Made by a program: the position numbers and the translations under genes. A stretch of 64,000 nucleotides of DNA, taken from positions 308,174 to 372,173 of the IMG/VR virus record IMGVR_UViG_3300043410_001892. One strand, written 5' to 3'. The notes beneath the pieces were generated by a model. The model was not told where the DNA came from. It saw only the letters and a program-made list of their open reading frames with translations, and made no database searches. This document shows, piece by piece, positions 44,342 through 60,206 of the stretch; within the stretch, counting starts at the first letter, position 1, and each line of letters begins with the position of its first letter.

Positions 44342-44349
44342 ATAATAGT

Positions 44350-44607
44350 ATGAAAATAGAAGAATTACTAACAGAACTTACGTTTAAGGGCTCGCAATGC
44401 ACTAAAGACTGCAGTGGTCACGAAGCAGGATTTAATCACCAAGTAAGAAAAGGTACTTCAAGTGACTCATATAGTCCTCATAGTCCTAGTTTTAATAAGG
44501 GTGCAGCTATTGCAAGGGCAGATCGAACTGTAACTAGAGCTCCTCAGCCTCGCGACAAAGGTAGATTTGCTGCTAGACCAAAGCCAAGAACTAAGAAATC
44601 TAAATAG
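44350..44607 (+). CDS. Hypothetical protein with capsid-targeting-like N-terminus
   Basis: MKIEELLTE; CT.DCSGH.AG...SF..G; CTAAATA upstream. Confidence 0.7.
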   Translation: MKIEELLTELTFKGSQCTKDCSGHEAGFNHQVRKGTSSDSYSPHSPSFNKGAAIARADRTVTRAPQPRDKGRFAARPKPRTKKSK

Positions 44608-44769
44608 GCCCCGCTGTGCAAGTGTGTGATATACTTATATATATGCGCATGCTTGCACGTTCAAAAAAATTTCAATTTAATCAAGTCGTATACATTGACA
44701 ATGCACACATATATGTGTATTATAACAGTTTTTAACATAGACCCCGCTGTACACATATAGGAGAAAACA

Positions 44770-44973
44770 ATGGCAGACGATTTTGAATCAAGAGTACAAT
44801 TGTCATCAGGTTGTTTGATGTACGTTCGTACACAGCACGATGATGATCGATTAGTAGTGTTTGCATTTAAGCACGATGAGTTTAGATGTGATTTCCAAAT
44901 ATTTTATGACGATTGTAGTGACGAATTTAAAAGCTGGGTAGAACAGCCAGTTATCACTGCTGCTTCGTTTTAG
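44770..44973 (+). CDS. Hypothetical protein
   Basis: AGGAG RBS, own promoter; flanked by motif copies. Confidence 0.7.
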   Translation: MADDFESRVQLSSGCLMYVRTQHDDDRLVVFAFKHDEFRCDFQIFYDDCSDEFKSWVEQPVITAASF

Positions 44974-45007
44974 GCCCCGCTGTACACATAATTGGTAAAA
45001 TCAATAA

Positions 45008-45048
45008 TTGACATTTGAGTTTAGTTACTGTATAGTATACGGTAACTA
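45008..45048 (+). promoter_or_regulatory. sigma70 promoter with overlapping palindrome
   Basis: TTGACA-17-TATAGT; TAGTTACTGTATA-G-TATACGGTAACTA inverted repeat at 45022-45048. Confidence 0.75.
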
Positions 45049-45410
45049 CAGAAGGTGTCGCGCAAACCACATAGTAACTGCGCCCTATAACTGGACAACT
45101 GTATCACAGTGAAGGAATTGTTGAGCTGTAGCAACGACATAACCACCTACCCATTTGGATGAACATGAGATGTACCTTTACAAAACTCATTACAGGTTAT
45201 GGCCCCGCTGTACACATAAGGTTAAAAGAAGGAGTAGCACTCCTACGATTGTATATGCAGTTAGCATTGTGTATACAGTCCGCCGTCATATTTACCAGGA
45301 CGGAGCTCGAGGTACCGGATGACCGCCTCTGTAATGCTCTAATGCTAAGACATGAAAAACTCAACAAATGTTCGCCATTGGCCTTTACGGGCCAATGTGA
45401 CTTCTTAATC
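45043..45410 (+). ncRNA. Candidate large structured non-coding RNA
   Basis: Follows a strong promoter with no credible ORF; at least 8 stems and a potential 8-bp pseudoknot (see findings). Confidence 0.6.
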
Positions 45411-45533
45411 TAACAAAATATTCAAAGAAATAAAAATTCAAATTAAAATAATGAATATGAGCGAATGCGAATTTGAATTATTTTAATTTGTTTGTGAGCT
45501 GTAAGCTCGCAATTTTACTATTAGTGAGGAAAT

Positions 45534-45767
45534 ATGATTGAAATATCTGACAAAACTGCATGCAGGAAATTAGGATACAATGAAGCATGGCTGTATTGCT
45601 TAACTTTAAACCATAATGGACATAAAGATTGGCGTATGCCAGCTCAGTTTGATCATTATCAAGGTAACGACTGGCCAACTTCAACTTGGGTTGAAGTAAG
45701 TAACCCAAATAGTATTATAGATATCACTGATACTTTTGGAATAGTCCCAGTAAGAACTATTGATTAA
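45534..45767 (+). CDS. Array A gene 3
   Basis: YNEAWLYCLTL..NGHKDWRMP...IVPVR. Confidence 0.8.
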   Translation: MIEISDKTACRKLGYNEAWLYCLTLNHNGHKDWRMPAQFDHYQGNDWPTSTWVEVSNPNSIIDITDTFGIVPVRTID

Positions 45768-45833
45768 ATTATCATTTGTAAATTCTAAAAATTTATATTA
45801 CAATAATGTTTTTTAATAATCATGAGGTGCAAC

Positions 45834-46190
45834 ATGGCAAAAAAAGTTAAGTATAAATCAGCCGAAGATAAACGCCGTGCATTAGAAGCTGAAAAACAAT
45901 GGAAAGAAATGACTAAGACATATGGTCTTAGTGATAAGCCGGCTAATACAAAATCACTTAGAACAATCTCACAGAAAAAAACATTAAGTAATGTTGCACC
46001 AACATATAGAGGTAGTGATAGTAAACCTCCCAGTTTAGTTACAACTACTAAAGGTGGCGGCAGCAAAGTTACAGCTCCAAGATATACCGGTACTTTGATT
46101 AAAGGTATCGCAACGATGCATAAATCAAATGCCGTGCCAATTATTGACCAAGAGCAAGCAACTGAGATTTCACGGATGCGTAGAGGATGA
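45834..46190 (+). CDS. Conserved hypothetical phage protein
   Basis: YTGT.IKGIATMHKSNAVP......A.EIS.MRR. Confidence 0.75.
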   Translation: MAKKVKYKSAEDKRRALEAEKQWKEMTKTYGLSDKPANTKSLRTISQKKTLSNVAPTYRGSDSKPPSLVTTTKGGGSKVTAPRYTGTLIKGIATMHKSNAVPIIDQEQATEISRMRRG

Positions 46191-46399
46191 CAGAATTTGC
46201 CCCAATGGTCTTCCATCAGCTAACATATAACGATGCATGGATGTACTGTGTTACATTAGAATACGATGGACATAAGGATTGGCGTTTGCCTACTTTTTTA
46301 GAATGGTGTAATAGAAATGATTTACTTGGTTGGTATGAAAACGCGACGGTGCAAGCCGCAACATCAGTGCGAGCTGTTTGCCCAGTGAGGGATATATGA
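46187..46399 (+). CDS. Array A gene 4
   Basis: AWMYCVTLEYDGHKDWRLPT...VCPVRDI. Confidence 0.8.
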   Translation: MTEFAPMVFHQLTYNDAWMYCVTLEYDGHKDWRLPTFLEWCNRNDLLGWYENATVQAATSVRAVCPVRDI

Positions 46400-46608
46400 T
46401 AGAATTTGCCGCAATGGTCTTCCATCAGCTAACATATAGCGAGGCATGGATGTACTGTGTTACATTAGAATACGATGGACATAAGGATTGGCGCCTGCCA
46501 ACCCTTAACGAATGGAGTAATAGTAGTGAATTACTCGGTTGGTATGAAAACGCGTCGCCGGTTTTCACCCATTCTAAGCGAGCTGTTTGCCCAGTGAGGG
46601 ATATATGA
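46396..46608 (+). CDS. Array A gene 5 (recent duplicate of gene 4)
   Basis: Near-identical DNA to 46187..46399. Confidence 0.8.
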   Translation: MIEFAAMVFHQLTYSEAWMYCVTLEYDGHKDWRLPTLNEWSNSSELLGWYENASPVFTHSKRAVCPVRDI

Positions 46609-46865
46609 TAGAATTTGGTCCATTATCTAGTACAAAATTTTTGTATCGAGATGCATGGCTATATTGTCACACCTTTAATTATAATGGACATAAGGATTGG
46701 CGTATGATAACAAAAGCAGATGCATTCGTATTAGCGTTGGACGGTATAACCATCTATTCTGGTACTTGGATTGATAAAACTGTTCCTGATCACATGTTAA
46801 GTAATAATATATTTGGCGACTTTACACGAGCCCATGTAATACCAGTGAGGGATAAAAATGATTGA
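46605..46865 (+). CDS. Array A gene 6
   Basis: AWLYC..F.YNGHKDWRM...VIPVRD. Confidence 0.8.
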   Translation: MIEFGPLSSTKFLYRDAWLYCHTFNYNGHKDWRMITKADAFVLALDGITIYSGTWIDKTVPDHMLSNNIFGDFTRAHVIPVRDKND

Positions 46866-47079: not shown

Positions 47080-47221
47080 TAACTACTTGCAAATTCTAAT
47101 ATAATTTGTTATAATTATTTTTTAAACTAAATGCGAGGTTATATGATTGATTTATTTTTAACTCTAAGTTTAATTGTAGTAATGCTATATTTGATGAATA
47201 AAGTTAGTGAGATTATCGAAC

Positions 47222-47470
47222 ATGATAGAATTTAGTACGCTATCTGATCAGATGGTTGACAGAGAAACTGCCATCATGTTAGAGTTTATGTGCTGTCACA
47301 ACAATAAAAAAGGTTGGAGATTTCCAACCGATCGAGAATACATCACTCGTAAAGAAATCCCATATGGAGTTTGGTCTAAAGGGTTAGTTGATCGTAATGA
47401 TAAAAAATCAAGATTATGCTTTTTTGTGAGAGATATAAATGACGAAAACATGGAAAGTAGCAGTAGGTGA
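47222..47470 (+). CDS. Array A gene 8
   Basis: MIEF...KKGWRFPT..E...FVRD. Confidence 0.7.
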   Translation: MIEFSTLSDQMVDRETAIMLEFMCCHNNKKGWRFPTDREYITRKEIPYGVWSKGLVDRNDKKSRLCFFVRDINDENMESSSR

Positions 47471-47741
47471 TTACGTAGTAGAAGTTGCTGATTATCCACG
47501 TAACTATATGTCGTATGATGAAGCAGCTATGCACTGTTTGTTTTTGAAAATCAATAAAGCAGCTGGTTGGCGAATACCAACTGCAGCTGAATATAACAAA
47601 ATTGATGGCATCACTTGTATAATTGATAGATATCGTGATAGTGGGCTATCAGCACCATTTGATCAACGTGATTTTGAGTCAGCAATACGTCGACCATTAT
47701 TACCAGTTAGAACTATCAAAGACCCCGCTGTACACACGTAG
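47439..47741 (+). CDS. Array A gene 9
   Basis: YDEA.MHC..L....GWRIPT..E...LPVR. Confidence 0.75.
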   Translation: MTKTWKVAVGDYVVEVADYPRNYMSYDEAAMHCLFLKINKAAGWRIPTAAEYNKIDGITCIIDRYRDSGLSAPFDQRDFESAIRRPLLPVRTIKDPAVHT

Positions 47742-47779
47742 GAAAATAGTAAATAATGAATTAGCCCGGGAGGAAAGTT

Positions 47780-48040
47780 ATGAAAAAACTTATTTTATCA
47801 GTTTTAGAAACTGGTCCAAAGACTCCGATTGAATTATTCAATCTTTGCAAGTTTACAGATCCTTATGTATTTGCAAGAACCATAACTGAACTCACTATTT
47901 CTAAGAAGATTCAAAGAAATGTGATAATCCCTAACCATCCTACAGTTTATCATTCAATTACCGCAGTACCTAATAAACTATTTGAGAATCTCTCATGGGA
48001 AGATATTCGGGTAGAATACCATTTGACATCCACACAGTAA
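47780..48040 (+). CDS. Hypothetical protein (possible winged helix)
   Basis: IL..L..GPKT..EL. Confidence 0.55.
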   Translation: MKKLILSVLETGPKTPIELFNLCKFTDPYVFARTITELTISKKIQRNVIIPNHPTVYHSITAVPNKLFENLSWEDIRVEYHLTSTQ

Positions 48041-48083
48041 TACACTATAATTTAACACATTACAACAACTTTAAGGAATCTAA

Positions 48084-48302
48084 ATGCAAGTGACGCAGAA
48101 CAATAAGGGCGATACAGTTGGTATTATTAAAGACGCAGAGGAAACAGTTATACTAAATTATTCCTTTTGGGAATGCGATTGTTCAACTATGTTTATACGA
48201 CCGGTAACTATTACACATTGTCGACAATGTGGTGCTGATCGTGATGACAGTCCTATTGCAAATGATCTTCATGTACAGATTTTTGTTTATAACACTATTT
48301 AA
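48084..48302 (+). CDS. Hypothetical Zn-ribbon protein
   Basis: WECDC...C.QCG; consensus promoter at 48023. Confidence 0.65.
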   Translation: MQVTQNNKGDTVGIIKDAEETVILNYSFWECDCSTMFIRPVTITHCRQCGADRDDSPIANDLHVQIFVYNTI

Positions 48303-48314
48303 TAAGGAGTAACT

Positions 48315-49394
48315 ATGACACTCGAAGCAACTGCTATTTCAATTCTTGAAGGCGAAGAAGTAAGTCCAATTGATAAAAAAGATGCAATGGAACTTATCGA
48401 ACACTTACAAGCATGGCTGCCAAATTATCCACAAGGTTCAAATAAGTTTATTTCTTATCTACATAAGAATTTAACTCCAATTCACGCAGTCTACGGTTTA
48501 TACTCTGCAGTTGACAATGGTAGTTTAGAAATTACACATCGTAATCTCCAAACTATGATGTTGTTTGAAAAAGATCTTGGTTACTTAGTCAAACATTTAG
48601 AAAATCCAGAGAAGAAGATAAACTTCTTCAATGCTATGCTTAAAGGTACTGATATTTCGTATGTCGAGCTGGAACTAACTAGTCCGTTTATGATTCAACC
48701 AGAAGAAGAGATTGGCACTGGTACATACGAACAAACTGTTGCGATTGAAGATTTATTTGCTAATACTGAAGAAGAAGATACTACAACAGCAGCTTCGACG
48801 ACCTCAGCGCCAAGTGTATCAACTGCAACTAAATCGTCTACTAATAAAATATCAGAACCATTTAAAGATATTTTAGATACTGCTGCTAAAAAAGTACTTG
48901 GCGTAGGAGTTAAGAAGACTGATGCTGAAAAAGATCAAGAACAAGATGATCATGATGCATACTATGTATATACGCAGTATTTGTATCAGTTTACCCCGGA
49001 TGAAGACTGTGATCTTGCTATCTCAGTAGTATCGCAAAAGTTTTGGGATGACAACGGATATCTTGATGATCAACACATCTCGGAGTATTTAGAAGCGATT
49101 ATTCCAGACTGGTCCGATAACTGGTGTGAAACTATGGAAAGTGTATTTGAATACACTGGTGGTTCAACTAAGGCAGAAGCTATTGCTTATTTAAAAGCAA
49201 CTGGGTTCTTTAAAGAAGAAGAACTATTTGATGTTGAATTTAGTAAAGCAGATATCTTACTAGGTTATCTTGAAGGCCAACCTGAAGAAATAATTTCTAA
49301 GTTTCTCAAAGAGGCACTTACACATCTTGATGAAAGCCAAATTGAAGACTTAATTCAAAAGTATGAAGACGCTTGGCACGAAGAGGATGATTGA
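48315..49394 (+). CDS. Acidic hypothetical protein
   Basis: 359 aa, AAGGAG RBS. Confidence 0.75.
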   Translation: MTLEATAISILEGEEVSPIDKKDAMELIEHLQAWLPNYPQGSNKFISYLHKNLTPIHAVYGLYSAVDNGSLEITHRNLQTMMLFEKDLGYLVKHLENPEKKINFFNAMLKGTDISYVELELTSPFMIQPEEEIGTGTYEQTVAIEDLFANTEEEDTTTAASTTSAPSVSTATKSSTNKISEPFKDILDTAAKKVLGVGVKKTDAEKDQEQDDHDAYYVYTQYLYQFTPDEDCDLAISVVSQKFWDDNGYLDDQHISEYLEAIIPDWSDNWCETMESVFEYTGGSTKAEAIAYLKATGFFKEEELFDVEFSKADILLGYLEGQPEEIISKFLKEALTHLDESQIEDLIQKYEDAWHEEDD

Positions 49395-49608
49395 TATACA
49401 CGATCTAGGCATATCAACTGATTACACCACTGCATGGTTGATATGCCTAACCATGGAACACAACGGACATAAAGATTGGCGATTGCCAACATGGTATGAC
49501 TATATAAATAGTGCAGAACTACATGACTGCTGGTATGAAGATGATTTTTACACCGTATACATAGGAAAGAACGTATTTGCAGTTCGTAGCAAAGAGGCCC
49601 CACTGTAA
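49387..49608 (+). CDS. Array A gene 10
   Basis: AWLICLT..HNGHKDWRLPT...AVR. Confidence 0.75.
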   Translation: MIDIHDLGISTDYTTAWLICLTMEHNGHKDWRLPTWYDYINSAELHDCWYEDDFYTVYIGKNVFAVRSKEAPL

Positions 49609-49826
49609 TGGAAAAAATAGAAATTGCTCAAACTACTCGAAAATCCTTAACTTATGCTGAAGCACAGATGTATTGTTTTGTGTATGAAGAGAATAATATT
49701 CGTGGTTGGAGATTACCAACTGAAGATGAGTATGTAAACCACAATGAAATATGGGGTTGGGTTCAAGATGATGAACGTCAAGACGAGTACGGTACCTTGA
49801 GAGTTACTCCAGTGAGAGATTTATGA
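49608..49826 (+). CDS. Array A gene 11
   Basis: YAEAQMYC......GWRLPT..E...VTPVRD. Confidence 0.8.
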   Translation: MEKIEIAQTTRKSLTYAEAQMYCFVYEENNIRGWRLPTEDEYVNHNEIWGWVQDDERQDEYGTLRVTPVRDL

Positions 49827-50056
49827 TTGAGTTTGCCCCTCAATCACCAACCAATATGTCATTTGATGAAGCATTTCTCTATTGTTTAACACTTAACTAC
49901 AAAGGACATAAGGATTGGTCTATACCTTATAGACGAGAGAAACGCTCATACATGATAGGTACTTGGTCTATTGATGATATAAAACTGATAGAGTTTTACT
50001 ATTCATCTGATACAAAGACATCTGTATTTCCTATTAGAGGTTATTATGAATCATGA
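49823..50056 (+). CDS. Array A gene 12
   Basis: AFLYCLTLNYKGHKDW..P...PIRG. Confidence 0.8.
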   Translation: MIEFAPQSPTNMSFDEAFLYCLTLNYKGHKDWSIPYRREKRSYMIGTWSIDDIKLIEFYYSSDTKTSVFPIRGYYES

Positions 50057-50273
50057 ATACGGTATAAGATCGCCCGATCGCTTAACTTTTGACGAAGCAT
50101 TTCTGTATTGCCTTACACATAATTTTAATGGACATAAAGATTGGTATATGCCAACTTTTACTATGTGGGTATTTGATGATGTTATTACTGGCTGGCATAG
50201 TTCAGCTAAACTGCAACGTGATATTAGTTATGACATATCACGAGTTATACCAGTGAGAGATATAGATGATTGA
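50046..50273 (+). CDS. Array A gene 13
   Basis: AFLYCLT..FNGHKDW.MPT...VIPVRDIDD. Confidence 0.8.
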   Translation: MNHEYGIRSPDRLTFDEAFLYCLTHNFNGHKDWYMPTFTMWVFDDVITGWHSSAKLQRDISYDISRVIPVRDIDD

Positions 50274-50481
50274 AATTGCATATAAAACTATAAAAGACAT
50301 GGATTACGATACTGCATGGCTTTATTGTTTGGTATATGAGAAAGACGGGCATAAAGATTGGCGATTGCCTAGTCGTGACGAATACTTTAATACTGACGGA
50401 ATACATCTACATACTTGGTTTGAAAACAGAGAAGATGACACTAAATGGTGTTGCCAACCAGTGAGAGGTATAGATGATTGA
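50266..50481 (+). CDS. Array A gene 14
   Basis: AWLYCL....DGHKDWRLPS...QPVRGIDD. Confidence 0.8.
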   Translation: MIEIAYKTIKDMDYDTAWLYCLVYEKDGHKDWRLPSRDEYFNTDGIHLHTWFENREDDTKWCCQPVRGIDD

Positions 50482-50686
50482 ATTTGCTATACGATCTCAA
50501 GAAGAAATGGTTTACGACCAAGCATTTCTGTATTGTCTAACACTCGAGTATAATGGACATAAAGATTGGCGATTGCCTACAGGAATTGAATATTCTATTA
50601 CGGATGCGCTATCATTTTGCTGGTTTGAAGAAAGAAAAACCGGCGAAAGATGGGTATGTCAACCAGTGAGAGATATAGATGATTGA
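50474..50686 (+). CDS. Array A gene 15
   Basis: AFLYCLTLEYNGHKDWRLPT...QPVRDIDD. Confidence 0.8.
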   Translation: MIEFAIRSQEEMVYDQAFLYCLTLEYNGHKDWRLPTGIEYSITDALSFCWFEERKTGERWVCQPVRDIDD

Positions 50687-50891
50687 AAAAGGACCAGCAG
50701 CTGGAAAAAAACTTCATTATAGAGAAGCGTGGATGTATTGTCTTACACTCTCTTATAACGGACACAAAGATTGGCGTATGCCAAGTTACTTTGAAACTAA
50801 TTACGGGTGGAATGAACGAGATGTAATGAACCCTAATTTAGAATCGCCCTATCAATATTCAATTATACCAGTGAGAGATATAGATGATTGA
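50679..50891 (+). CDS. Array A gene 16
   Basis: AWMYCLTLSYNGHKDWRMPS...IPVRDIDD. Confidence 0.8.
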   Translation: MIEKGPAAGKKLHYREAWMYCLTLSYNGHKDWRMPSYFETNYGWNERDVMNPNLESPYQYSIIPVRDIDD

Positions 50892-51090: not shown

Positions 51091-51157
51091 ACCATTTGCA
51101 ATTTTAAATTTATACTGTTATAATATATTTTTATTTACACACCCCGCGGGAGTATAT

Positions 51158-51451: not shown

Positions 51452-51458
51452 GGTAAGC

Positions 51459-52194: not shown

Positions 52195-52195
52195 A

Positions 52196-53104: not shown

Positions 53105-53189
53105 TCTTTACAAATCAACAAATAATTGCTATACTATATTTTTTTAACACTACAGCAAGCAGGCCCCGCTGTACACACAGGAGCATAAC

Positions 53190-53792
53190 ATGGCAACACG
53201 TAGCGCAATTGGTTTTATGAGAAACGATGGTACTGTCCGTGCAGTATATTGTCATTGGGATGGATACTTATCACACGTTGGTAAAATCCTTATTGAGAAT
53301 TATGATTTACTTGGTGTTGATGACTTATGCGATTTAGGTGATATAAGCTCATTAGGTGAAACAATTGAAGATACTGTGTTTTACGGACGCGATCGCAACG
53401 AAGATGATGTTGAAGCACATGAGTTTGCATCTGAACAAGAGTTTGTAGATTGGTATGATGATTCTGAGTTTTTCTACTTAATAAAAGATGACAAATGGTA
53501 TGTGTCAGAACATTGCGAAGAGTTCTCGTTACTTGAAGATCGTTTAAAAGATACAAAAGTTAAGTTTACTAAGTATGTTCGTCCAGATGAAACAACAACA
53601 TCCTACAGTGCAAGAGATGCAGTAGTAGCAATGGTAGCCGATGGTGTAGTTGAACCAGTGTATATGGTTAAGTTATTGCTTGATCGTATTGATCCTGAAA
53701 CATTAGAAGCGTTGTTGAAAGAAGAATTCCACATTGACGAGATCATTCCAGAATGCTACTTTGAAGAGGAGGAAAATAATGAAATTGATTAA
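53190..53792 (+). CDS. Conserved hypothetical phage protein
   Basis: MATRS.IG......VYCHWDGY...VG..L...GDISSL...YGRDR.E. Confidence 0.75.
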   Translation: MATRSAIGFMRNDGTVRAVYCHWDGYLSHVGKILIENYDLLGVDDLCDLGDISSLGETIEDTVFYGRDRNEDDVEAHEFASEQEFVDWYDDSEFFYLIKDDKWYVSEHCEEFSLLEDRLKDTKVKFTKYVRPDETTTSYSARDAVVAMVADGVVEPVYMVKLLLDRIDPETLEALLKEEFHIDEIIPECYFEEEENNEID

Positions 53793-54009
53793 ACTAACAG
53801 AGTTAAACACTGATCCTATGGTAATACCTAACACTTATCATATACCAGTTGAGAAAATTGATTATGTTATTGAACATGAAACAGGATCAACTGTTGTAGT
53901 CAATCGTGCAGATTTAAGGGTAATTGAACCAGCTGAATATATCAATAGCATATTATCAGCTAATACTGATTTTAGTAATTTTGGAGGGTTTGATGAGTAC
54001 GTCAATTAA
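53779..54009 (+). CDS. Hypothetical protein
   Basis: Start MKLIKLT. Confidence 0.6.
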   Translation: MKLIKLTELNTDPMVIPNTYHIPVEKIDYVIEHETGSTVVVNRADLRVIEPAEYINSILSANTDFSNFGGFDEYVN

Positions 54010-54283
54010 AGTCAATGTTGTAGCTAAGGATTCTAAACCTAAAAAACCAGTAATCAAAAAACGTTTGGTTCAGGTTGATAATCATCGCATTCGAATCGCT
54101 GAAACTGATTTGCCACATAAAGGTAATGTTGACCTGCATGATCCTAAGATTAAAGAACGCGGACCTAATCAAGAATTGGTAGTGTATGCTACTGCCAAAG
54201 AAGATACTTACGAACCTGGGAGAGAATACGTCTGTTACTTTACTCTTAAAGGTAAACTTGAAGGTTACTTCACAGTCAATTAG
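53993..54283 (+). CDS. Hypothetical protein
   Basis: Start MSTSIKV. Confidence 0.6.
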   Translation: MSTSIKVNVVAKDSKPKKPVIKKRLVQVDNHRIRIAETDLPHKGNVDLHDPKIKERGPNQELVVYATAKEDTYEPGREYVCYFTLKGKLEGYFTVN

Positions 54284-54291
54284 AAGGCACA

Positions 54292-54696
54292 ATGAATATT
54301 ACATTTGCAAGTTTAAAGACAACTGGTAAAGTTGAAACAGTATGGTGTGTACTTGATCTTGGTATGTCAAATTATTATAGTGACCTAGGTTACAGAGATC
54401 ATATTCGAGATTATCTAATAGTATGGGGTAGGCGTGGTGGCAAATTACAGACTATTGTGAAACGAGGACACACTAAAATCTCTATCAATAAAGACATTTA
54501 CGATCAAGAATTTCGCGAAAATATGTGGGGTTTTTACCAAATTACTCACGGCCAAGGTATGGCTATAGCTAAACGGATTTATAAGATTCTTAAGAAAGAT
54601 TATATTCCATTTAAGGCAGATTCTCTCGAAGAGATTGATCCAAACTTACCTGAACAGCTAAACAAATTAGTATTTTGGGAGACTATGAAATTATGA
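54292..54696 (+). CDS. WGR-like domain protein
   Basis: WGRRGGKLQ...K..K.Y; paralog of 55104..55448. Confidence 0.6.
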   Translation: MNITFASLKTTGKVETVWCVLDLGMSNYYSDLGYRDHIRDYLIVWGRRGGKLQTIVKRGHTKISINKDIYDQEFRENMWGFYQITHGQGMAIAKRIYKILKKDYIPFKADSLEEIDPNLPEQLNKLVFWETMKL

Positions 54697-54875
54697 GTGG
54701 ATTAGGATATATTGCAGCTGAACTTGAACAGTGTTGTGAACTCTGTGGCAAAATTGAAGAATGTCGTCCGTATGGTCCTAATGGTGAACAAATCTGTTTT
54801 GACTGTGGTATGAAAGATGAAGAAACTACTAAACAACAGATGGCAAAGTATATCTTTGGAGTAGACAGTGATTAA
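54693..54875 (+). CDS. Small Zn-finger protein
   Basis: CELCG...ECRPYG..GE.IC.DC. Confidence 0.7.
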   Translation: MSGLGYIAAELEQCCELCGKIEECRPYGPNGEQICFDCGMKDEETTKQQMAKYIFGVDSD

Positions 54876-55107
54876 AGATAATCCGTTGCTCGATTATGCT
54901 CCACCGTTAAATAAACCTGTAGATGAAGATACCGCATTCATGTATTGTATAACACTAAGTTACAATGGTTATAAAGACTGGAGATTCCCAACAAGACCTG
55001 AATTTGGAGATACGGGTGATGTATGGTTTGACGGTGAGAACTTTTCTAATGCATCTGGCTATTGGAGATGGCGAGTTCAACCAGTAAGATCTAAAGAGGA
55101 TATATGA
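54868..55107 (+). CDS. Array A gene 22
   Basis: AFMYCITLSYNGYKDWRFPT...QPVR. Confidence 0.8.
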   Translation: MIKDNPLLDYAPPLNKPVDEDTAFMYCITLSYNGYKDWRFPTRPEFGDTGDVWFDGENFSNASGYWRWRVQPVRSKEDI

Positions 55108-55448
55108 AGATTACATTTGCAGGTTTAAAGACCTCAGGTAAAGTTGAAACGGTCTGGGTTGTTATTGAGTTAGGTACACATCAACCACAATCATGGTATC
55201 ATGATTTTGTGATTGCCTGGGGCAGACGAGGCGGCAAATTGCAGTCTATGACTCGATTAGGATATAATCAACCACATTTAGAATATAACTCTGATCGTTA
55301 CCACAGGTTTAGCACTATTGGCGGCATGATCAATAAGAAACTTAACAATGGATACAAAAGTATTGACGAAACACAGTTAGATGAAGTATATCCAGAGTTT
55401 AAACAAGATTTAGATAAACTTGCATTTTGGGAAACATTGAAACTATGA
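55104..55448 (+). CDS. WGR-like domain protein
   Basis: WGRRGGKLQ...KKLNNGY. Confidence 0.6.
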   Translation: MKITFAGLKTSGKVETVWVVIELGTHQPQSWYHDFVIAWGRRGGKLQSMTRLGYNQPHLEYNSDRYHRFSTIGGMINKKLNNGYKSIDETQLDEVYPEFKQDLDKLAFWETLKL

Positions 55449-55726
55449 GAACAGTTGATCTTAAAGAAAACGAAAATGCATCTGATTTACATGTAAATCT
55501 AATACGAAGTTGTGTTAAGGAATATGAACAACTGAACGATACAACACTATTTGAAGTATTTCATTTTAAAGATTGGCTAATACCATGGATTTTTTCAAAA
55601 TATAAAGTTAAGTATAATGTGTTCATCGACGACGATGGCGATGACGCTATTTGTAGTGTTACTATAACCGATGAAAAGCAATACGCTTGGTACTTATTAA
55701 AACATACAACCTGCGAGGTCTTATGA
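55445..55726 (+). CDS. Hypothetical protein
   Basis: C-term I.DEK.Y.WYLLK, shared with the next gene. Confidence 0.6.
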   Translation: MRTVDLKENENASDLHVNLIRSCVKEYEQLNDTTLFEVFHFKDWLIPWIFSKYKVKYNVFIDDDGDDAICSVTITDEKQYAWYLLKHTTCEVL

Positions 55727-55980
55727 AAATAACAACAAACGATGAAATGTTTAATGGTGCAATTCGAACAGCCTATAGAGATGCATTCCGCGGTACATCT
55801 TATGCCAATCAGTGGTATTTTCGATACAGTGCAATAGAGCTTCTCACTAATTGGGCTAAACAGCACGGCATCCGTCCTTATGCTAAAGCACATGGAAGAT
55901 TTGTACAACTTAGAAAGAAAGATTGGTATATTACAGATAAAAAGAAGTATATGTTTTTCATTATGCAATATGGAAAGTAA
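55723..55980 (+). CDS. Hypothetical protein
   Basis: C-term ITDKKKYMFFIMQY. Confidence 0.6.
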   Translation: MKITTNDEMFNGAIRTAYRDAFRGTSYANQWYFRYSAIELLTNWAKQHGIRPYAKAHGRFVQLRKKDWYITDKKKYMFFIMQYGK

Positions 55981-56051
55981 AAATACTGCTTGCAATGCCA
56001 AACAAACTTTGCTATAATATATTTTTTAGTTAAACAACTGCGGAGCACACA

Positions 56052-56225
56052 ATGGACCAAATAGAACAATTTGAAGTAGACCAAATCACAGCTAATCTTG
56101 CAGCAAAAGGTATTACTGAATTTTCAATGCGACGTGGTAACAACTGCGTTTGGGTTTCATATGGCAGAGTAGATGCTTACTACATTTTTAGAGATGAGAA
56201 GTTAGTTGATATTCAAATTGACTAA
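56052..56225 (+). CDS. Small hypothetical protein (57 aa, not in track)
   Basis: Early promoter at 55990, GGAG RBS; MDQIEQFEV...DIQID. Confidence 0.65.
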   Translation: MDQIEQFEVDQITANLAAKGITEFSMRRGNNCVWVSYGRVDAYYIFRDEKLVDIQID

Positions 56226-56233
56226 TAACGTGC

Positions 56234-56270
56234 TTGCAATCCAGCTTACACTTTGCTATAATATATTTTT
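56234..56270 (+). promoter_or_regulatory. Early sigma70-like promoter (identical copy at 60672)
   Basis: TTGCAA-17-TATAAT with extended TG; related promoters near 43804, 44695, 45776, 47088, 48023, 51097, 53107, 55990, 59879, 62635. Confidence 0.8.
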
Positions 56271-56297
56271 ACTTACACAACATTAGGAGCGTACACT

Positions 56298-56720
56298 ATG
56301 GCTTACATGTCAAAAGAAAACAAAGAATCAAAAGCACCACGCTTAAGAGCTTTGGCTAAATCATATGGCTTAACTGCAACAGTAGCAGTTCATCATTCTA
56401 GTACATTGGTGTTAAATGTGTCTAAAGGTAAAATTGATTTTATCTCTAACTATGCTGATACTGTTTACAAAACTAATCACTGGGCAGCTGATAACGAACA
56501 AGACTACGAGTATAATAAAACTCGCACATATATGCAAGTATCGCATCACTACACAGGCAACTTTGATGGCAAGGCTAAAGAGTTTTTAGATAAAGCGTTT
56601 GCTATTATGTTTGAAGGCAATCATGATCGCAGCGATATCATGACAGACTACTTTGACGTGGGCTGGTATTGCGACATCAATATTGGAAAATGGGATAAAC
56701 CTTATATCGTTACTGCTTAA
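56298..56720 (+). CDS. Conserved hypothetical phage protein
   Basis: MAYMS.E.K...D.SD.MTDYFDVGWY.DINIGKWDKPY. Confidence 0.75.
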   Translation: MAYMSKENKESKAPRLRALAKSYGLTATVAVHHSSTLVLNVSKGKIDFISNYADTVYKTNHWAADNEQDYEYNKTRTYMQVSHHYTGNFDGKAKEFLDKAFAIMFEGNHDRSDIMTDYFDVGWYCDINIGKWDKPYIVTA

Positions 56721-56732
56721 GAGGAGATTGAA

Positions 56733-56981
56733 ATGGCAGTTAAAGTTACAACAAACCAAACAGAGTCTGTTGAAAAAAATAAGTATCCAATACTTGGAAT
56801 TTTTCCAGATGGTACTATTATTTTGTTTTCTTCTATAAATGAAGGCACTATCTTGAAATCAGAATCAAAACAAAGTATAGGTCAGTATAGTTCAAATCGG
56901 CCCGATTATCGCCATTTTGGTCCGGACTATAACTGGGTTCCGTATACTGGAACTATTACATTATCTAATGAGGAGCTATGA
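56733..56981 (+). CDS. Hypothetical protein
   Basis: GAGGAG RBS; YP......I.LF....GT....IG...Y.G.ITLSN. Confidence 0.7.
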   Translation: MAVKVTTNQTESVEKNKYPILGIFPDGTIILFSSINEGTILKSESKQSIGQYSSNRPDYRHFGPDYNWVPYTGTITLSNEEL

Positions 56982-57038
56982 GGGATTTAATAAATGTGGG
57001 ATAAGCCATACGTCGTTACCGCGTAACTTTCATTACAC

Positions 57039-57069
57039 AAGGTGCTTTGGTAACAGAGCACCTTTTTTT
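57039..57069 (+). terminator. Rho-independent terminator
   Basis: AAGGTGCTTTG-GTAA-CAGAGCACCTT followed by T run. Confidence 0.8.
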
Positions 57070-57079
57070 ATGAGATTAT

Positions 57080-57274
57080 ATGATAGAATTTTCATTTGAC
57101 GAACAAAATGGTGTTATTCATCGTACTAATGGTCCAGCTTGGATAAATCCAGGATATGGACATACTCCACTTGGATACTATTGGCATTGGCGGCTATTTG
57201 GCGTTAGACATCGTTATTATGGACCGCAAAATCGGGATGGTGATTGGTGGTTACATGGGAAGAGAGTAAAATGA
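57080..57274 (+). CDS. Array B gene 1 (HRxNGPA/HRYYGP)
   Basis: HRTNGPA...W.LFG.RHRYYGP...W.LHGKRVK. Confidence 0.8.
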   Translation: MIEFSFDEQNGVIHRTNGPAWINPGYGHTPLGYYWHWRLFGVRHRYYGPQNRDGDWWLHGKRVK

Positions 57275-57474
57275 TTGAAATACGAAACACTGCTAACAAT
57301 GGATTTGTATATCTTTTAGATGGTAATTGGCATCGATCTAATGGCCCTGCTAGGGTATGGGCAAATGGAGAATGGGGATGGTATTTAACTGATCGCCAAC
57401 ATCGCTATTATGGTCCGCAAGCAAACAATGAGTGGTGGATACATGGGGAGTGTATAAAATATGGATTCGACTAA
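57271..57474 (+). CDS. Array B gene 2
   Basis: HRSNGPA...HRYYGP. Confidence 0.8.
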   Translation: MIEIRNTANNGFVYLLDGNWHRSNGPARVWANGEWGWYLTDRQHRYYGPQANNEWWIHGECIKYGFD

Positions 57475-57682
57475 GTCACAACGATATTTATACAGTTATT
57501 TAACACCTAATGATACAGTTGAGTACAAATTGCATACTGGTGGGTTTCATCGATGTGATGGACCTGCACTAACACGATATGAAAGATGGGCATGGTTTTT
57601 ATATGATCAACATCATCGGTATTATGGTCCGCAGCACTCACATTATCCTAATTGGATGATTCATGGGAAGAGGGTTAAATGA
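57461..57682 (+). CDS. Array B gene 3
   Basis: HRCDGPA...HRYYGP. Confidence 0.8.
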   Translation: MDSTKSQRYLYSYLTPNDTVEYKLHTGGFHRCDGPALTRYERWAWFLYDQHHRYYGPQHSHYPNWMIHGKRVK

Positions 57683-57879
57683 TTAAACAAACTAAAAACG
57701 ATCATAGTATTAGGTTTACTAAAGATGGTAAGTTGCATTGTGCAAATGGTCCAACAGTATCATGGAATGATGGTTCATGGTCCTGGTATTTAGATGGCTA
57801 TCCTCATCGTTATTATGGACCACAAAAATCTTATGTGTTATATCGTAACTGGTATATTCACGGGATTGAAATTAAATGA
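57679..57879 (+). CDS. Array B gene 4
   Basis: HCANGP...HRYYGP. Confidence 0.8.
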   Translation: MIKQTKNDHSIRFTKDGKLHCANGPTVSWNDGSWSWYLDGYPHRYYGPQKSYVLYRNWYIHGIEIK

Positions 57880-58076
57880 TTATAAGAATTGAAGAAGAAC
57901 ATAGTATATGCTATCGATTAGAAAATGGTGTGTGCCATCGACCTAATGGACCTGCTGTAGAGTTTAAGGCTGACAAGACAGGCTATTGGTTCTTGTTTGG
58001 TAAACGACATAGATACTATGGTCCGGCATCTCATGCTAATAATTGGTTTTGGATACATGACAAGAGAGTTAAATGA
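57876..58076 (+). CDS. Array B gene 5
   Basis: HRPNGPA...HRYYGP. Confidence 0.8.
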   Translation: MIIRIEEEHSICYRLENGVCHRPNGPAVEFKADKTGYWFLFGKRHRYYGPASHANNWFWIHDKRVK

Positions 58077-58267
58077 TTACAAAAACTAAGGAAGGCAGTA
58101 TTGTTGTATACCGATTAAATGACATGTGGCATCGATCTAGTGGTCCTGCTTATGAGTTTCCTAATGGTAAAGGCTTTTGGGCATTATTTGGTAAACGACA
58201 TAGATACTATGGTCCGGCATCTCCCTATAGTAACATATATTATCTACATGACAGGTTGGTTAAATGA
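58073..58267 (+). CDS. Array B gene 6
   Basis: HRSSGPA...HRYYGP. Confidence 0.8.
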   Translation: MITKTKEGSIVVYRLNDMWHRSSGPAYEFPNGKGFWALFGKRHRYYGPASPYSNIYYLHDRLVK

Positions 58268-58491
58268 TAGAAAGATTTGAAGACATTGAATGTGTTCGTT
58301 ACCGATTAAATGGTGTGCCTCATCGAACTAATGGACCTGCGTTTGAATGGCTAAATGGTGACTGGAGTTGGGCATTGCATGGGAAAATACATCGTTATTA
58401 CGGACTTGCAGGTAGCAATGCAATGATAGATATTTTTCATGAATCGCGCAAAATAAAGTTTTGGGTATTGCACGGTGAGAGAGTTAGATGA
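58264..58491 (+). CDS. Array B gene 7
   Basis: HRTNGPA...HRYYG. Confidence 0.8.
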   Translation: MIERFEDIECVRYRLNGVPHRTNGPAFEWLNGDWSWALHGKIHRYYGLAGSNAMIDIFHESRKIKFWVLHGERVR

Positions 58492-58712
58492 TTGATCGAA
58501 TTGAGGAAAACGATCGTGTTTGTTATCGATTAAATGGGGTGCCTCACCGTCCTAATGGACCTGCGTTTGAATGGCCAAATGGTGACTGGAGTTGGTCGTT
58601 GTATGGGAAAATACATCGCTATTACGGACCTGCGGCTTGCAATGAAACGATAGATAAGTATCATGGCGGCAATTCAAAGTTTTGGGTATTGCACGGTGAG
58701 GGAGTTAGATGA
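58488..58712 (+). CDS. Array B gene 8 (recent duplicate of gene 7)
   Basis: HRPNGPA...HRYYGP. Confidence 0.8.
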   Translation: MIDRIEENDRVCYRLNGVPHRPNGPAFEWPNGDWSWSLYGKIHRYYGPAACNETIDKYHGGNSKFWVLHGEGVR

Positions 58713-58948
58713 TTGAAGAAAGACAGTGTGTAGCATCAGTTGTTGGTACATACACAGAATATGTAAAAGACAATAAACCTCATCGACCCAATGGCCCGGC
58801 AAGGATCTATAATGATGGTGATGCTTACTGGTGGTTATATGGGAATAGACATAGATACTATGGACCTCAAACATCTAACCAAGAACGATCAATTTGGCGA
58901 GTACACGACCGGGAAATGAAATATGAAGTCCACTGGATTGAAGAATAA
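58709..58948 (+). CDS. Array B gene 9
   Basis: HRPNGPA...HRYYGP. Confidence 0.8.
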   Translation: MIEERQCVASVVGTYTEYVKDNKPHRPNGPARIYNDGDAYWWLYGNRHRYYGPQTSNQERSIWRVHDREMKYEVHWIEE

Positions 58949-59117
58949 TAAGTATTATGAGCATCGAGAAGATGACAAGTTACACTGCACTAATGGTCCG
59001 GCATGTGCTGCCGGACCAAACAGTTGGTTATGGTGTTTAAATGATCAACCTCATAGATATTACGGTCCTTACCATTCTGACGGATGTTGGTGTCTTCACG
59101 GGAAAAGAGTTAAATGA
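58923..59117 (+). CDS. Array B gene 10
   Basis: HCTNGPA...HRYYGP. Confidence 0.8.
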   Translation: MKSTGLKNNKYYEHREDDKLHCTNGPACAAGPNSWLWCLNDQPHRYYGPYHSDGCWCLHGKRVK

Positions 59118-59323
59118 CTAAGCCACACCGATATGTAAGCACTTATTGTGAAACTGATGATACAGTTATTTATAGAGTGCTCAATGATTATCATCGATGT
59201 GATGGACCTGCACTAATACAATATGACAAATGGGGATGGTTTTTGTTTAACAACTGGCACAGGTATTATGGAGAGGCTCGTAGTGCCGGTGATTGGTATA
59301 TTCACGGGAAATTAGTTAAATGA
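59114..59323 (+). CDS. Array B gene 11
   Basis: HRCDGPA...HRYYG. Confidence 0.8.
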   Translation: MTKPHRYVSTYCETDDTVIYRVLNDYHRCDGPALIQYDKWGWFLFNNWHRYYGEARSAGDWYIHGKLVK

Positions 59324-59511
59324 TAAAAAAAACAGATGGCGGATATTATTATGAATATCGATCAAATGGTAAGAGACATCAAGTCAATGGTCCTGCGTTA
59401 GTCTTTGTTACTGGTGAAAAATATTGGTTTTTATATGATCAATGGCATAGATATTATGGCTATCAATCTAACAAGAATCAATGGTGGTTACATGGGGAAA
59501 AAATTAAATGA
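59320..59511 (+). CDS. Array B gene 12
   Basis: HQVNGPA...HRYYG. Confidence 0.8.
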   Translation: MIKKTDGGYYYEYRSNGKRHQVNGPALVFVTGEKYWFLYDQWHRYYGYQSNKNQWWLHGEKIK

Positions 59512-59720
59512 TTGAACAATTTGAGTACCATAGTTGCACAGTATATTTAAAGGACGGCGAACCGCATCGTCCTAATGGACCAGCAAGGATATACCGTGAT
59601 GGATCTAAGTATTGGTGGTTATATGGGATTCGCCATCGATACTATGGACCACAATGTAAGGATATTTATGGAACAATTTGGAGAATACATGGCTTACTGA
59701 TAAAACATGAACACAAATAA
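59508..59720 (+). CDS. Array B gene 13
   Basis: HRPNGPA...HRYYGP. Confidence 0.8.
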   Translation: MIEQFEYHSCTVYLKDGEPHRPNGPARIYRDGSKYWWLYGIRHRYYGPQCKDIYGTIWRIHGLLIKHEHK

Positions 59721-59871
59721 CGATCTAACACATAAGACTAATGGCCCCGCTGTAACGTGTAGCAACGGTTATTGGTCATGGAGATTATTTAACAATTATC
59801 ACAGGTATTACGGTCCGGTAAATAGTAGAGGACGATGGTGTATTCATAACAAGTGGGTTAAATGGTTGTAA
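59707..59871 (+). CDS. Array B gene 14 (54 aa, not in track)
   Basis: MNTNNDLTHKTNGPAV...HRYYGP...WCIHNKWVKWL. Confidence 0.7.
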   Translation: MNTNNDLTHKTNGPAVTCSNGYWSWRLFNNYHRYYGPVNSRGRWCIHNKWVKWL

Positions 59872-60195: not shown

Positions 60196-60206
60196 GATAA
60201 CACACA

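What the first reader, a model, noticed from the sequence alone, without database searches (positions are those of the whole stretch)
44607..59754. Polar GC-rich motif GGCCCCGCTGTACACA repeated 8 times
Seen: 8 plus-strand copies in an AT-rich genome, four of them within 600 bp. I noticed none in the left 44 kb. They lie directly after stop codons (44607, 44973), between promoter and RBS (44740, 53162), inside the candidate ncRNA between stems (45201), and across the 3' ends of array A genes (47721, 49596). Reading frame is not conserved, so this is a nucleic-acid-level signal. Inference: a protein-binding site (origin iteron, antitermination or RNA-processing site, DNA-entry signal) or a recombination site. 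The copy in the ncRNA could titrate the same factor.
Basis: partly seen in the sequence, partly recalled or inferred. Interest (0 to 1): 0.7.

Follow-up and report, generated by a model that had tools for sequence, protein, structure and literature searches.

The report
Polar gene-boundary motif in phage early block
A GC-rich 11-13-base word (A-GGCCCCGCTGT-A) is repeated about 20 times, always on the coding strand and almost always at gene borders, in the 75-kb early-gene block of an uncultured 372-kb T4-like freshwater phage and its relatives. It most likely marks places where a still unknown factor stops, pauses or reprograms the host RNA polymerase.

Summary
Only 3 copies match the full 16-mer. 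Two more differ by one base, and 3 share only the 11-12-nt core GRCCCCRCTGT (one sits at 59743, not 59754).

In the whole 372,173-bp phage genome the core occurs 14 times on + and 0 on - (22:0 with one mismatch allowed). That compares with 0.05 expected, and these are the most over-represented 9-mers in the genome. All copies lie in one + strand block of small early genes and are densest at its two ends.

The motif is conserved at 97% at syntenic sites whose flanks are 41-53% identical. It recurs, always one-stranded, in five IMG/VR relatives, in a 48%-GC sister clade and in 32 metagenome contigs. Half the copies abut a stop codon. Others lie between a sigma70 promoter and the ribosome-binding site, inside a promoter spacer, or 1 nt after a Polynucleobacter-1 RNA.

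The motif has no hairpin, no fixed -10 element and no complementary guide. The phage has a gp55 homologue and no detected RNA polymerase of its own.

Best reading (about 0.42): an orientation-dependent transcription-elongation control site, like mycobacteriophage stoperators or ops. Main rival: an RNA processing or binding site. An origin iteron or DNA-entry signal is not supported for this genome.

The parts
44607..44622 (+). Motif copy A (GGCCCCGCTGT + GCAAG). Its first G is the last base of the TAG stop of ORF 44335-44607.
44695..44723 (+). Sigma70-type promoter TTGACA-17-TATTAT, 16 nt upstream of copy B.
44740..44755 (+). Motif copy B (GACCCCGCTGTACACA), in the 5' leader. AGGAG and the ATG of ORF 44770-44973 follow.
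44973..44988 (+). Motif copy C (exact 16-mer). It overlaps the TAG stop of ORF 44770-44973 and ends 19 nt before the next -35 box.
45008..45036 (+). Sigma70-type promoter TTGACA-17-TATAGT that drives the ncRNA.
45055..45199 (+). Polynucleobacter-1 RNA (Rfam RF01718, 61 bits, full-length model). Its closing helix ends 1 nt before copy D.
45201..45216 (+). Motif copy D (exact 16-mer), in a mostly unpaired linker between two structured RNA domains (RNAalifold pairs GCTG weakly, without covariation). It is kept in all six relatives that carry this ncRNA.
45217..45512 (+). Downstream part of the conserved ncRNA unit. It holds a hairpin with compensatory changes (45232-45246), a second structured domain, an AT-rich long hairpin and the terminator-like hairpin 45492-45512.
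47721..47736 (+). Motif copy E (GACCCCGCTGTACACA), inside the last codons of ORF 47439-47741.
49596..49611 (+). Motif copy F (variant GGCCCCACTGT + AATGG). It spans the stop of ORF 49363-49608 and the ATG of ORF 49608-49826.
53107..53135 (+). Promoter TTTACA-17-TATACT (with TG), 26 nt upstream of copy G.
53162..53177 (+). Motif copy G (exact 16-mer), in the 5' leader 28 nt before the ATG of the conserved 200-aa ORF 53190-53792. It is syntenic in G001 and G002.
59743..59758 (+). Motif copy H (GGCCCCGCTGT + AACGT), at the border between ORF 59508-59720 and ORF 59707-59871.

Best explanation
The motif is a cis-acting, orientation-dependent control point for transcription elongation by the host RNA polymerase within the phage's early-gene block. 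A sequence-specific reader recognises A-GGCCCCGCTG(T/C)-A on the DNA as the polymerase arrives.

Two ways of reading are possible:
- As duplex DNA, like the monomeric repressor on mycobacteriophage 'stoperators'.
- As the exposed non-template strand of a paused complex, like RfaH on ops.

The outcome would be a polar block, pause or termination. Alternatively the polymerase could be reprogrammed at that point. Single copies would punctuate individual genes: just after stop codons, just after promoters, or inside one promoter. Clusters and tandem arrays would act as strong insulators at the two ends of the block and in front of the strong promoters of stable RNAs (the Polynucleobacter-1 RNA here, tRNAs in the sister clade).

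Shown: existence, polarity, gene-border placement, conservation, and the absence of a hairpin, promoter or guide.
Inferred: the level at which the motif is read (DNA during transcription), the effect (stop or pause), and the existence of a dedicated reader.
For: 1. Strict co-orientation with transcription.
- 14:0 in the genome, 22:0 at <=1 mismatch, and 19:0 for CCCCGCTG.
- 19:0, 12:0, 4:0, 3:0 and 1:0 in relatives, and 6:1 in G006.
- 32 of 32 multi-copy metagenome contigs are one-stranded.
- Pooled p is about 1e-16.

2. Restriction to one transcription block, with density at both ends.

3. Gene-border placement.
- 25 of 49 copies lie within -7..+21 nt of an ORF stop, against 10% expected (p about 9e-13).
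- Deep-in-ORF placement is 11 of 49, against 68% expected.

4. Operator-like positions.
- Copies start 16-28 nt after a -10 box.
- CCCCGCTGT sits inside the spacer of an early promoter and is conserved in three genomes while neighbouring spacer bases vary.

5. Strong purifying selection. The motif is 97% identical against 41-53% for flanks at nine syntenic sites, even where flanking genes are replaced. The motif persists across clades of 35-48% GC that share only a handful of early genes.

6. A self-contained 13-15-nt asymmetric word. No other conserved position, hairpin or fixed -10 was found in 130 non-redundant copies.

7. Tandem arrays with 23-73-nt spacing in relatives. These suit multiple binding sites or tandem stops, not promoters or cistron processing.

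8. The layout G-11 G-10 ... T-3 G-2 Y-1 matches 5 of 6 positions of the extended consensus pause (PMC6062546). It also mirrors the 12-nt ops design (PMC5995543). Position 11 varies only T/C, which fits Y-1.

9. The distribution reproduces that of L5 stoperators. Those are more than 20 asymmetric 13-mers in promoters and short intergenic spaces, with orientation tied to transcription (PMC9283540).

10. The phage relies on host RNA polymerase. It has a gp55 homologue. No T7-like, sigma70-r2 or giant-protein polymerase signal was found.
Against: - No reader was found. There is no NusG/RfaH NGN domain, no homologue of L5 gp71, and no MotA.
- Phylogenetic profiling (present in G0, G3 and G6; absent from motif-less G007) returned only metabolic or chaperone genes and unknowns. 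The one early-block candidate is an Api92-like fold with no informative match.
- The base after the motif is A (70%), not the G that the consensus pause and ops require.
- The motif is absent next to most of the 32 canonical early promoters, so it is not a general early shut-off.
- Copy D sits in a mostly unpaired linker of an ncRNA. One RNA(?) contig of a relative starts 2 nt before it. Both fit an RNA-level site at least as well.
- There are no functional data of any kind, and the host is unknown.
Confidence: 0.42

Rival explanations
1. RNA-level site. The transcribed motif GGCCCCGCUGU is bound or cut by a sequence-specific RNA-binding protein or endoribonuclease. This would separate cistrons and release stable RNAs from early polycistronic transcripts, or control mRNA stability and translation. 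The ncRNA copy would act as a substrate or a decoy.
For: - The polarity and gene-border placement are the same as for the best explanation.
- Copy D lies in a mostly unpaired linker, directly after the closing helix of the Polynucleobacter-1 RNA, in six relatives.
- Motif clusters precede tRNA genes in the sister clade.
- About a dozen copies sit 6-8 nt before a Shine-Dalgarno box.
- A contig of a relative in a probable RNA run starts 2 nt upstream of copy D. Other contigs in these runs start at plausible transcription start sites.
Against: - Eleven invariant contiguous bases are unusually many for a single-strand RNA-binding protein, and no such nuclease is known.
- No RegB homologue was found.
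- No complementary guide exists anywhere in the genome, even allowing G:U pairs.
- Tandem arrays of three copies within 60-150 nt make little sense as cleavage sites, although they would suit a sponge.
- The copy inside a promoter spacer is not explained.
- RNA contigs also run across copy D uncut.
Confidence: 0.28
2. Promoter of a new temporal class (for example middle genes), recognised by host polymerase carrying an unidentified phage factor or by an unrecognised phage polymerase. Transcription would start at the conserved A just after the motif.
For: - Polarity, restriction to one gene block, and position upstream of SD-ATG at a near-constant 27-30 nt in several unrelated genes.
- Conserved A at +12.
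- An RNA(?) contig starts next to copy D.
- MotA was not detected, so the middle-gene mode of this T4-like clade is unknown.
Against: - No -10-like element lies at a fixed distance.
- No upstream conservation beyond 3 nt.
- No phage polymerase or second sigma factor was detected.
- Copies lie 6-20 nt downstream of sigma70 start sites and inside a sigma70 promoter spacer.
- Arrays with 23-27-nt spacing are sterically implausible for promoters.
- Several copies at the block end have no gene downstream.
Confidence: 0.1
3. DNA-level repeat that serves recombination, replication or packaging. Options are a cassette-boundary site that shuffles early genes (as PeSL cassettes do in T4-type phages), an origin iteron, a nicking site or a Chi-like signal.
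For: - The early block is highly mosaic.
- In G001 an extra unit [326-aa ORF + motif] sits exactly between two motif copies, and another ORF is inserted right after a copy.
- In the G002-G001 comparison, 5 of 12 copies lie within 30 nt of a homology break (p = 0.007).
- Sister-clade arrays lie near DnaA-box arrays and GCGAAGC words.
Against: - Five of six pairwise junction tests are not significant.
- There is no inverted repeat or hairpin.
- Inserted ORFs are not homing endonucleases by Pfam.
- No DnaA-box cluster or phased tandem copies occur in this genome.
- Restriction to the co-oriented early block and 100% co-orientation with genes are not required by any of these roles.
- Gene shuffling at the motif could be a by-product of a dispersed repeat.
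Confidence: 0.1

Closest known systems
Stoperators of Cluster A mycobacteriophages (L5 gp71-type immunity repressor)
   Same: - More than 20 copies of an asymmetric, GC-rich 13-mer.
- Sites lie in short intergenic spaces and in promoters.
- Orientation is strictly tied to the direction of transcription (PMC9283540).
- Here: 22 copies, gene borders, one inside a promoter spacer, and 100% co-oriented.
   Different: - No sequence homologue of gp71.
- The phage is a T4-like (gp55-bearing) jumbo phage with no sign of lysogeny in what was examined, not a temperate siphovirus.
- Sites are confined to one 75-kb early block rather than the whole genome.
- The word itself is unrelated.
- Binding and blocking are untested.
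ops element / RfaH (and other NusG-paralogue loading sites); the consensus elemental pause
   Same: - A 12-nt polar element with GG at positions 1-2 and TGT at 9-11, around a specific central core.
- It matches 5 of 6 positions of G-11 G-10 T-3 G-2 Y-1 G+1 (PMC6062546, PMC5995543).
- It is found in leaders downstream of promoters.
   Different: - The next base is A, not G.
- No NGN-domain protein in the phage.
- Far more copies, many right after stop codons or upstream of promoters.
Lambda-type nut sites (boxA/boxB)
   Same: A polar signal placed in a leader (like nutL) and right after a stop codon (like nutR), on early transcripts.
   Different: - No boxB-like hairpin and no conserved flank.
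- No resemblance to boxA.
- About 20 copies rather than 2.
PeSL mobile regulatory cassettes of T4-type phages; RNase III punctuation of T7 early mRNA
   Same: Repeated regulatory words between small early genes in a hyperplastic, mosaic region. They may promote gene shuffling and mark cistron borders.
   Different: Both of those are defined by stem-loops (PeSL also by a promoter). This motif has neither. This comparison rests on my own knowledge of those systems.
Iterons of plasmid or phage origins
   Same: Directly repeated, same-orientation protein-binding words. In sister-clade contigs, tandem copies lie near DnaA-box arrays.
   Different: In this genome the copies are dispersed over 75 kb at gene borders, unphased, and without DnaA boxes or a neighbouring unwinding element.

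Membership tests
Cluster A mycobacteriophage stoperator system | Many (>20) copies of one asymmetric 13-bp site | tested here: met
   14 exact-core and 22 <=1-mismatch copies. The logo spans 13-15 nt.
Cluster A mycobacteriophage stoperator system | Site orientation correlates with the direction of transcription; sites lie in short intergenic spaces and promoters | tested here: met
Cluster A mycobacteriophage stoperator system | Cognate gp71-type monomeric repressor (HTH + stoperator domain) | tested here: not met
   L5 gp71 finds nothing in the six-frame genome at E <= 10. A fold-level relative cannot be excluded.
Cluster A mycobacteriophage stoperator system | Bound site blocks elongation only in one orientation | not testable with these tools
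   Needs biochemistry or a reporter assay.
ops / RfaH-type loading site | 12-nt element that matches the consensus pause (G-11 G-10 ... G-2 Y-1 G+1) with pause at position 11 | tested here: inconclusive
   5 of 6 positions match. The +1 base is A in 70% and G in 11% of 130 copies (PMC6062546).
ops / RfaH-type loading site | Specialised NusG paralogue that reads the non-template strand | tested here: not met
   No PF02357 match in the phage genome. The host is unknown, so a host paralogue could not be checked.
Lambda-type nut site | boxA word plus boxB hairpin | tested here: not met
   No conserved position or pairing outside the 13-15-nt word.
Origin iterons | Tandem, phased copies next to an unwinding element and/or DnaA boxes at one locus | tested here: not met
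   In the window, spacing runs from 133 to 6,581 nt and DnaA boxes are at chance level. Partly met in sister-clade contigs only.
Sigma70 or T4 MotA-type promoter | -10 hexamer at a fixed distance from the conserved box | tested here: not met
   MotA was not detected.
PeSL cassettes / RNase III processing sites | Stem-loop as part of the repeat | tested here: not met
   No inverted repeat in or around the motif. The reverse complement is absent from the genome.
Chi-like recombination hotspot | Short word over-represented genome-wide, oriented with replication | tested here: not met
   Copies are confined to 20% of the genome. The 16-mer gives only scattered chance hits in 185,579 bacterial genomes.

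The most novel reading that the evidence does not exclude
A previously undescribed transcription-punctuation system of T4-like freshwater jumbo phages. A reader unrelated to stoperator repressors, NusG paralogues or N/Q antiterminators would recognise GGCCCCGCTGY in one orientation. It would gate host RNA polymerase at gene borders across a 75-kb early block. The phage-borne Polynucleobacter-1 RNA, which carries one copy in its 3' linker, would form part of the same circuit as a decoy or a regulated unit.
Probability: 0.3. Interest if true: 0.78.

Novelty: new variant of a known kind. Interest (0 to 1): 0.62.

Why it matters
How T4-like phages that lack MotA order and shut off their early genes is unknown. 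That group includes most environmental members.

Here a single, very sharply defined word marks gene borders in the early block of a whole clade of uncultured 350-370-kb phages. It survives while almost all early genes around it are exchanged. That gives a concrete, testable handle: a 13-nt site for pull-downs, reporter assays and in-vitro transcription.

It also places the orphan Rfam family Polynucleobacter-1 in phage genomes. There it sits behind a strong early promoter and next to the motif, which gives that RNA its first genomic context.

Practically, the word is a compact marker for recognising this phage group and its early block in metagenomes.

Tried and rejected
- **Chance or composition.** Rejected.
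- **Coding repeat.** Rejected: frames differ and most copies are intergenic. One copy, at genome 23105, lies inside an Ala/Pro-rich ORF and may be chance.
- **Hairpin or intrinsic terminator.** No complement nearby; only two orthologous sites (G001, G002) have a GCCCCG/CGGGGC pair.
- **Guide RNA partner.** None in the genome, even with G:U pairs.
- **Sigma70, sigma54 or MotA-type promoter.** No fixed -10.
- **Phage RNA polymerase.** PF00940 found nothing, but its control was silent. The giant 3-4-kaa ORFs show only CBM5/12, fn3 and Gly-rich domains.
- **NusG, sigma70_r2, RegB, MotA and L5 gp71 homologues.** None.
- **Host use of the word.** The 16-mer gives 84 scattered single hits in bacterial genomes. 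The one double hit is a GC-rich coding repeat.
- **Transcript evidence.** Only assembled contigs of four RNA or RNA(?) runs were available. They show that relatives of the ncRNA region are in RNA libraries but give no read-level ends.
- **Mosaic-junction test.** Mostly not significant.
It gave curli, Hsp70, ClpP, heme oxygenase/bilin reductase, cyclase, AlgH-like genes and unknowns, with no nucleic-acid-binding candidate.
- **Early 145-aa candidate.** The model is confident (pLDDT 86), but only a weak Api92/DUF1281 resemblance was found.
- **ORF-strand test on metagenome contigs.** Too noisy to use.
- **DnaA boxes in the window.** At chance level.
- **Literature search for the word.** Only unrelated primer hits.

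Full report
**What the window is.** The window is the last 64 kb of a 372,173-bp virus record. Its first and last 83 nt are identical, so the assembly is circular. GC content is 35.5%. The record encodes a homologue of the T4 late sigma factor gp55, NrdA, collagen-like tail fibres and a virion protein closest to T4-like cyanophages. It also has a SegE-like homing endonuclease, 13 tRNAs and many bacterial-type accessory genes. Runs that hold it are freshwater and aquatic metagenomes. It is therefore an uncultured T4-like jumbo phage that depends on host RNA polymerase. No T7-like polymerase, sigma70 region 2, NusG, MotA or RegB was detected. The 3-4-kaa ORFs show only structural-type domains.

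**Checking the observation.** The full 16-mer is exact at only three places (44973, 45201, 53162) and has one mismatch at two more (44740, 47721). All eight are on the + strand and none lies in window 1-44600.

Genome-wide the core occurs 14 times on + and never on -. With one mismatch the count is 22:0, and for the 8-mer CCCCGCTG it is 19:0. Against an order-3 Markov model, GGCCCCGCT is seen 14 times for 0.05 expected. The motif's 9-mers rank first among all words of the genome.

All copies fall in one + strand block of small ORFs that runs from about 351 kb through the record's junction to about 54 kb. They are dense at the block start (4 in 594 nt) and in its last 8 kb (8 copies, three of them in an ORF-poor final kilobase before a strong bidirectional terminator hairpin). 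They are sparse in the middle, where 32 near-identical early promoters of the type TTGCAA-N17-TGCTATAAT sit.

**Anatomy.** In 52, and then in 130, non-redundant copies the only conserved positions are A(-3), T/A(-2), A(-1), the 11-nt core, and A(+12). No hairpin, no second box and no -10 element at a fixed distance was found. Position 11 varies only between T and C, and position 2 between G and A.

Placement relative to genes:
- 25 of 49 copies in the three closest genomes have the stop codon of the upstream ORF within -7..+21 nt, against 10% expected (p about 9e-13).
- Only 11 of 49 lie deep in any ORF of at least 45 codons, against 68% expected.
- About a dozen copies lie 27-30 nt before an ATG, with a Shine-Dalgarno box in between.

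Placement relative to promoters:
- Sigma70-type promoters lie 10-40 nt downstream of the motif in 14 of 70 cases.
- They end 16-28 nt upstream of the motif in 6 of 70 cases.
- A GG-less copy, CCCCGCTGT, sits inside the spacer of an early promoter. It is conserved in three genomes while the neighbouring spacer bases differ.

Copy D (45201) follows by 1 nt the closing helix of a full-length Polynucleobacter-1 RNA (RF01718, 61 bits). It lies in a mostly unpaired linker, ahead of a hairpin with compensatory changes and a second conserved structured domain.

**Conservation.** The 16-mer retrieved five related IMG/VR contigs. Whole-record counts of the core are 19:0 (a complete 372,016-bp relative), 12:0, 4:0, 3:0 and 1:0, with zero hits for the reversed control word. 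At nine syntenic sites the motif is 97% identical between this genome and two relatives, while ungapped flanks are 41-53% identical. This holds even where the flanking genes have been replaced.

A sister clade of about 48% GC carries GGCCCCGCTG(C/T) in the same one-stranded way. There a cluster of four copies is followed by a promoter and tRNA genes. A distant 354-kb relative has none.

A metagenome scan gave 120 loci. In 32 of these there are at least two core copies, and in all 32 every copy is on one strand. Only a handful of early genes are shared between these clades. The motif is thus far more stable than the genes it separates.

In bacterial genomes the 16-mer gives only scattered single hits, so it is not a general host signal. 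No paper in the searched library mentions the word in this context.

**What it is not.**
- It is not a coding repeat, because frames differ and most copies are intergenic.
- It is not a hairpin terminator or an RNase III-type site. No complement was found, and the reverse complement is absent from the whole genome, even allowing G:U pairs.
- It is not a sigma70 or MotA-type promoter, because no -10 lies at a fixed distance.
- As a promoter for some other enzyme it is made unlikely by three findings. No polymerase gene was detected. Some copies lie just downstream of sigma70 start sites. Relatives carry tandem arrays spaced 23-27 nt apart.
- For this genome it is not an origin iteron or a DNA-entry signal. 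Copies are dispersed, unphased, restricted to gene borders of one transcription block, and not associated with DnaA boxes.
- A primary role in recombination has weak support. Only one of six pairwise tests links copies to homology breaks. However, two clean cases in G001 show an ORF inserted exactly at or between motif copies. A dispersed repeat may therefore help gene shuffling as a side effect.

**Most likely mechanism.** Every robust property points to a signal whose effect depends on the direction in which RNA polymerase travels:
- an asymmetric word of 13-15 nt;
- about 20 copies;
- absolute co-orientation with transcription;
- short intergenic and promoter-proximal positions;
- clusters at the edges of the transcription block and ahead of strong stable-RNA promoters;
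- tandem arrays in relatives.

The only described system with the same distribution is the stoperator set of Cluster A mycobacteriophages. There a monomeric repressor binds more than 20 asymmetric 13-mers in promoters and short intergenic spaces and stops elongation only in one orientation (PMC9283540).

A second precedent is ops. It is a 12-nt word whose outer bases make a consensus pause and whose centre is read on the non-template strand (PMC5995543). The present word has G-11, G-10, T-3, G-2 and Y-1 of the extended consensus pause (PMC6062546). That is 5 of 6 positions, but it has A rather than G at +1.

I therefore rank first an orientation-dependent elongation control site that acts as a block, pause or termination point, or as a loading point. 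It would be read by an unidentified, probably phage-encoded factor, with confidence about 0.42. What is shown is the anatomy, the polarity, the placement and the selection. The level of reading and the effect are inferred.

**Main rival.** The main rival is an RNA-level binding or cleavage site (about 0.28).
- For: copy D lies in a mostly unpaired linker of a conserved ncRNA. Motif clusters sit next to stable-RNA genes. One contig from a probable RNA run starts 2 nt before copy D. Other contigs of these runs begin at plausible start sites 38-39 nt upstream of a relative's ATG.
- Against: the length of the invariant word, the tandem arrays, the promoter-spacer copy, and the lack of a RegB-like nuclease or a guide.

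Profiling of genes present in three motif-bearing genomes and absent from the motif-less one returned accessory-metabolism and chaperone genes and several unknowns. The one early-block candidate (145 aa) folds confidently. It resembles only the uncharacterised Api92/DUF1281 family.

**Novelty and weight.** The motif family and its distribution appear undescribed. By behaviour it is closest to known polar elongation-control sites. It fails the membership tests that involve their proteins (gp71, NusG paralogues) or their RNA structures (boxB, stem-loops). The finding is solid as an observation and gives a precise experimental handle. Its function remains inferred.

Noticed in passing
window 45008-45512 (+); also L044 6605-6749, L308 1798-1942 (-), L331 4641-4785: The orphan Rfam family Polynucleobacter-1 RNA (RF01718) is phage-borne here. 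A full-length match sits behind a consensus sigma70 promoter at the start of the early block. It is part of a roughly 450-nt conserved ncRNA unit with a second structured domain showing compensatory pairs. The unit is 84% identical across relatives whose flanks are much more diverged. Pieces of it occur in lake and estuary metatranscriptome contigs.
   Followed up: partly
L318 1699-1888, L380 1733-1863, L299 9158-9243, L372 12244-12290, L294 5770-5781, L353 128-147 (metagenome contigs of the 45-48% GC sister clade): Arrays of 7-12 perfect DnaA boxes (TTATCCACA) lie about 600 nt downstream of tandem motif arrays. GCGAAGC mini-hairpin words lie upstream. This could be a DnaA-dependent origin or a DnaA sponge carried by these phages. 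The window's own genome has no such cluster.
   Followed up: partly
L294 4838-4898, L318 1011-1112, L372 11469-11625, L325 2432-2578: In relatives the motif also forms tandem arrays of three copies spaced 23-73 nt apart in non-coding DNA. This arrangement is not seen in the window.
   Followed up: partly
genome 355280-44269 through the junction (window about 47100-64000 and beyond): About 32 near-identical early promoters of the type TTGCAAT-N17-TGCTATAATATATTTTT occur, all on the + strand. Their distribution is complementary to that of the motif: promoters in the middle of the block, motif at its ends.
   Followed up: partly
window 43767-46617 and many other places in the block: A large paralogous family of roughly 75-aa ORFs (...DWR(M/L)PT...VPVRD) fills the early block. 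It includes a 209-bp tandem duplication at 46187-46617. Their shared C-terminal codons give a second set of strand-specific over-represented words (CCAGTGAGGGAT).
   Followed up: no
genome 275-289 kb, 244-252 kb; window 35963-39189, 61800-62627, 40998-41774: There is an unusual set of accessory genes for a phage:
- CsgG, CsgF and a curlin-repeat protein
- a CHASE2 adenylate/guanylate cyclase
- FecR
- heme oxygenase plus a ferredoxin-dependent bilin reductase
- Hsp70 and ClpP
- a Bax1-inhibitor-like protein
- AlgH-like, DUF454 and epimerase genes
- shikimate dehydrogenase
- a SegE-like GIY-YIG/NUMOD3 homing endonuclease
   Followed up: no
genome 273620-274041 (-) and about 52930-53010 (+): ARAGORN calls a tmRNA-like gene (marked permuted) near the tRNA cluster. 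Separately, a roughly 100-nt island of very high GC sits in the AT-rich, ORF-poor end of the early block.
   Followed up: no
genome 10235-10468 and 11261-11557 (L061): The two promoters that carry CCCCGCTGT in their spacer drive a 77-aa acidic four-cysteine (zinc-ribbon-like) protein and a 98-aa protein of unknown function. These are possible members of the motif's circuit.
   Followed up: no
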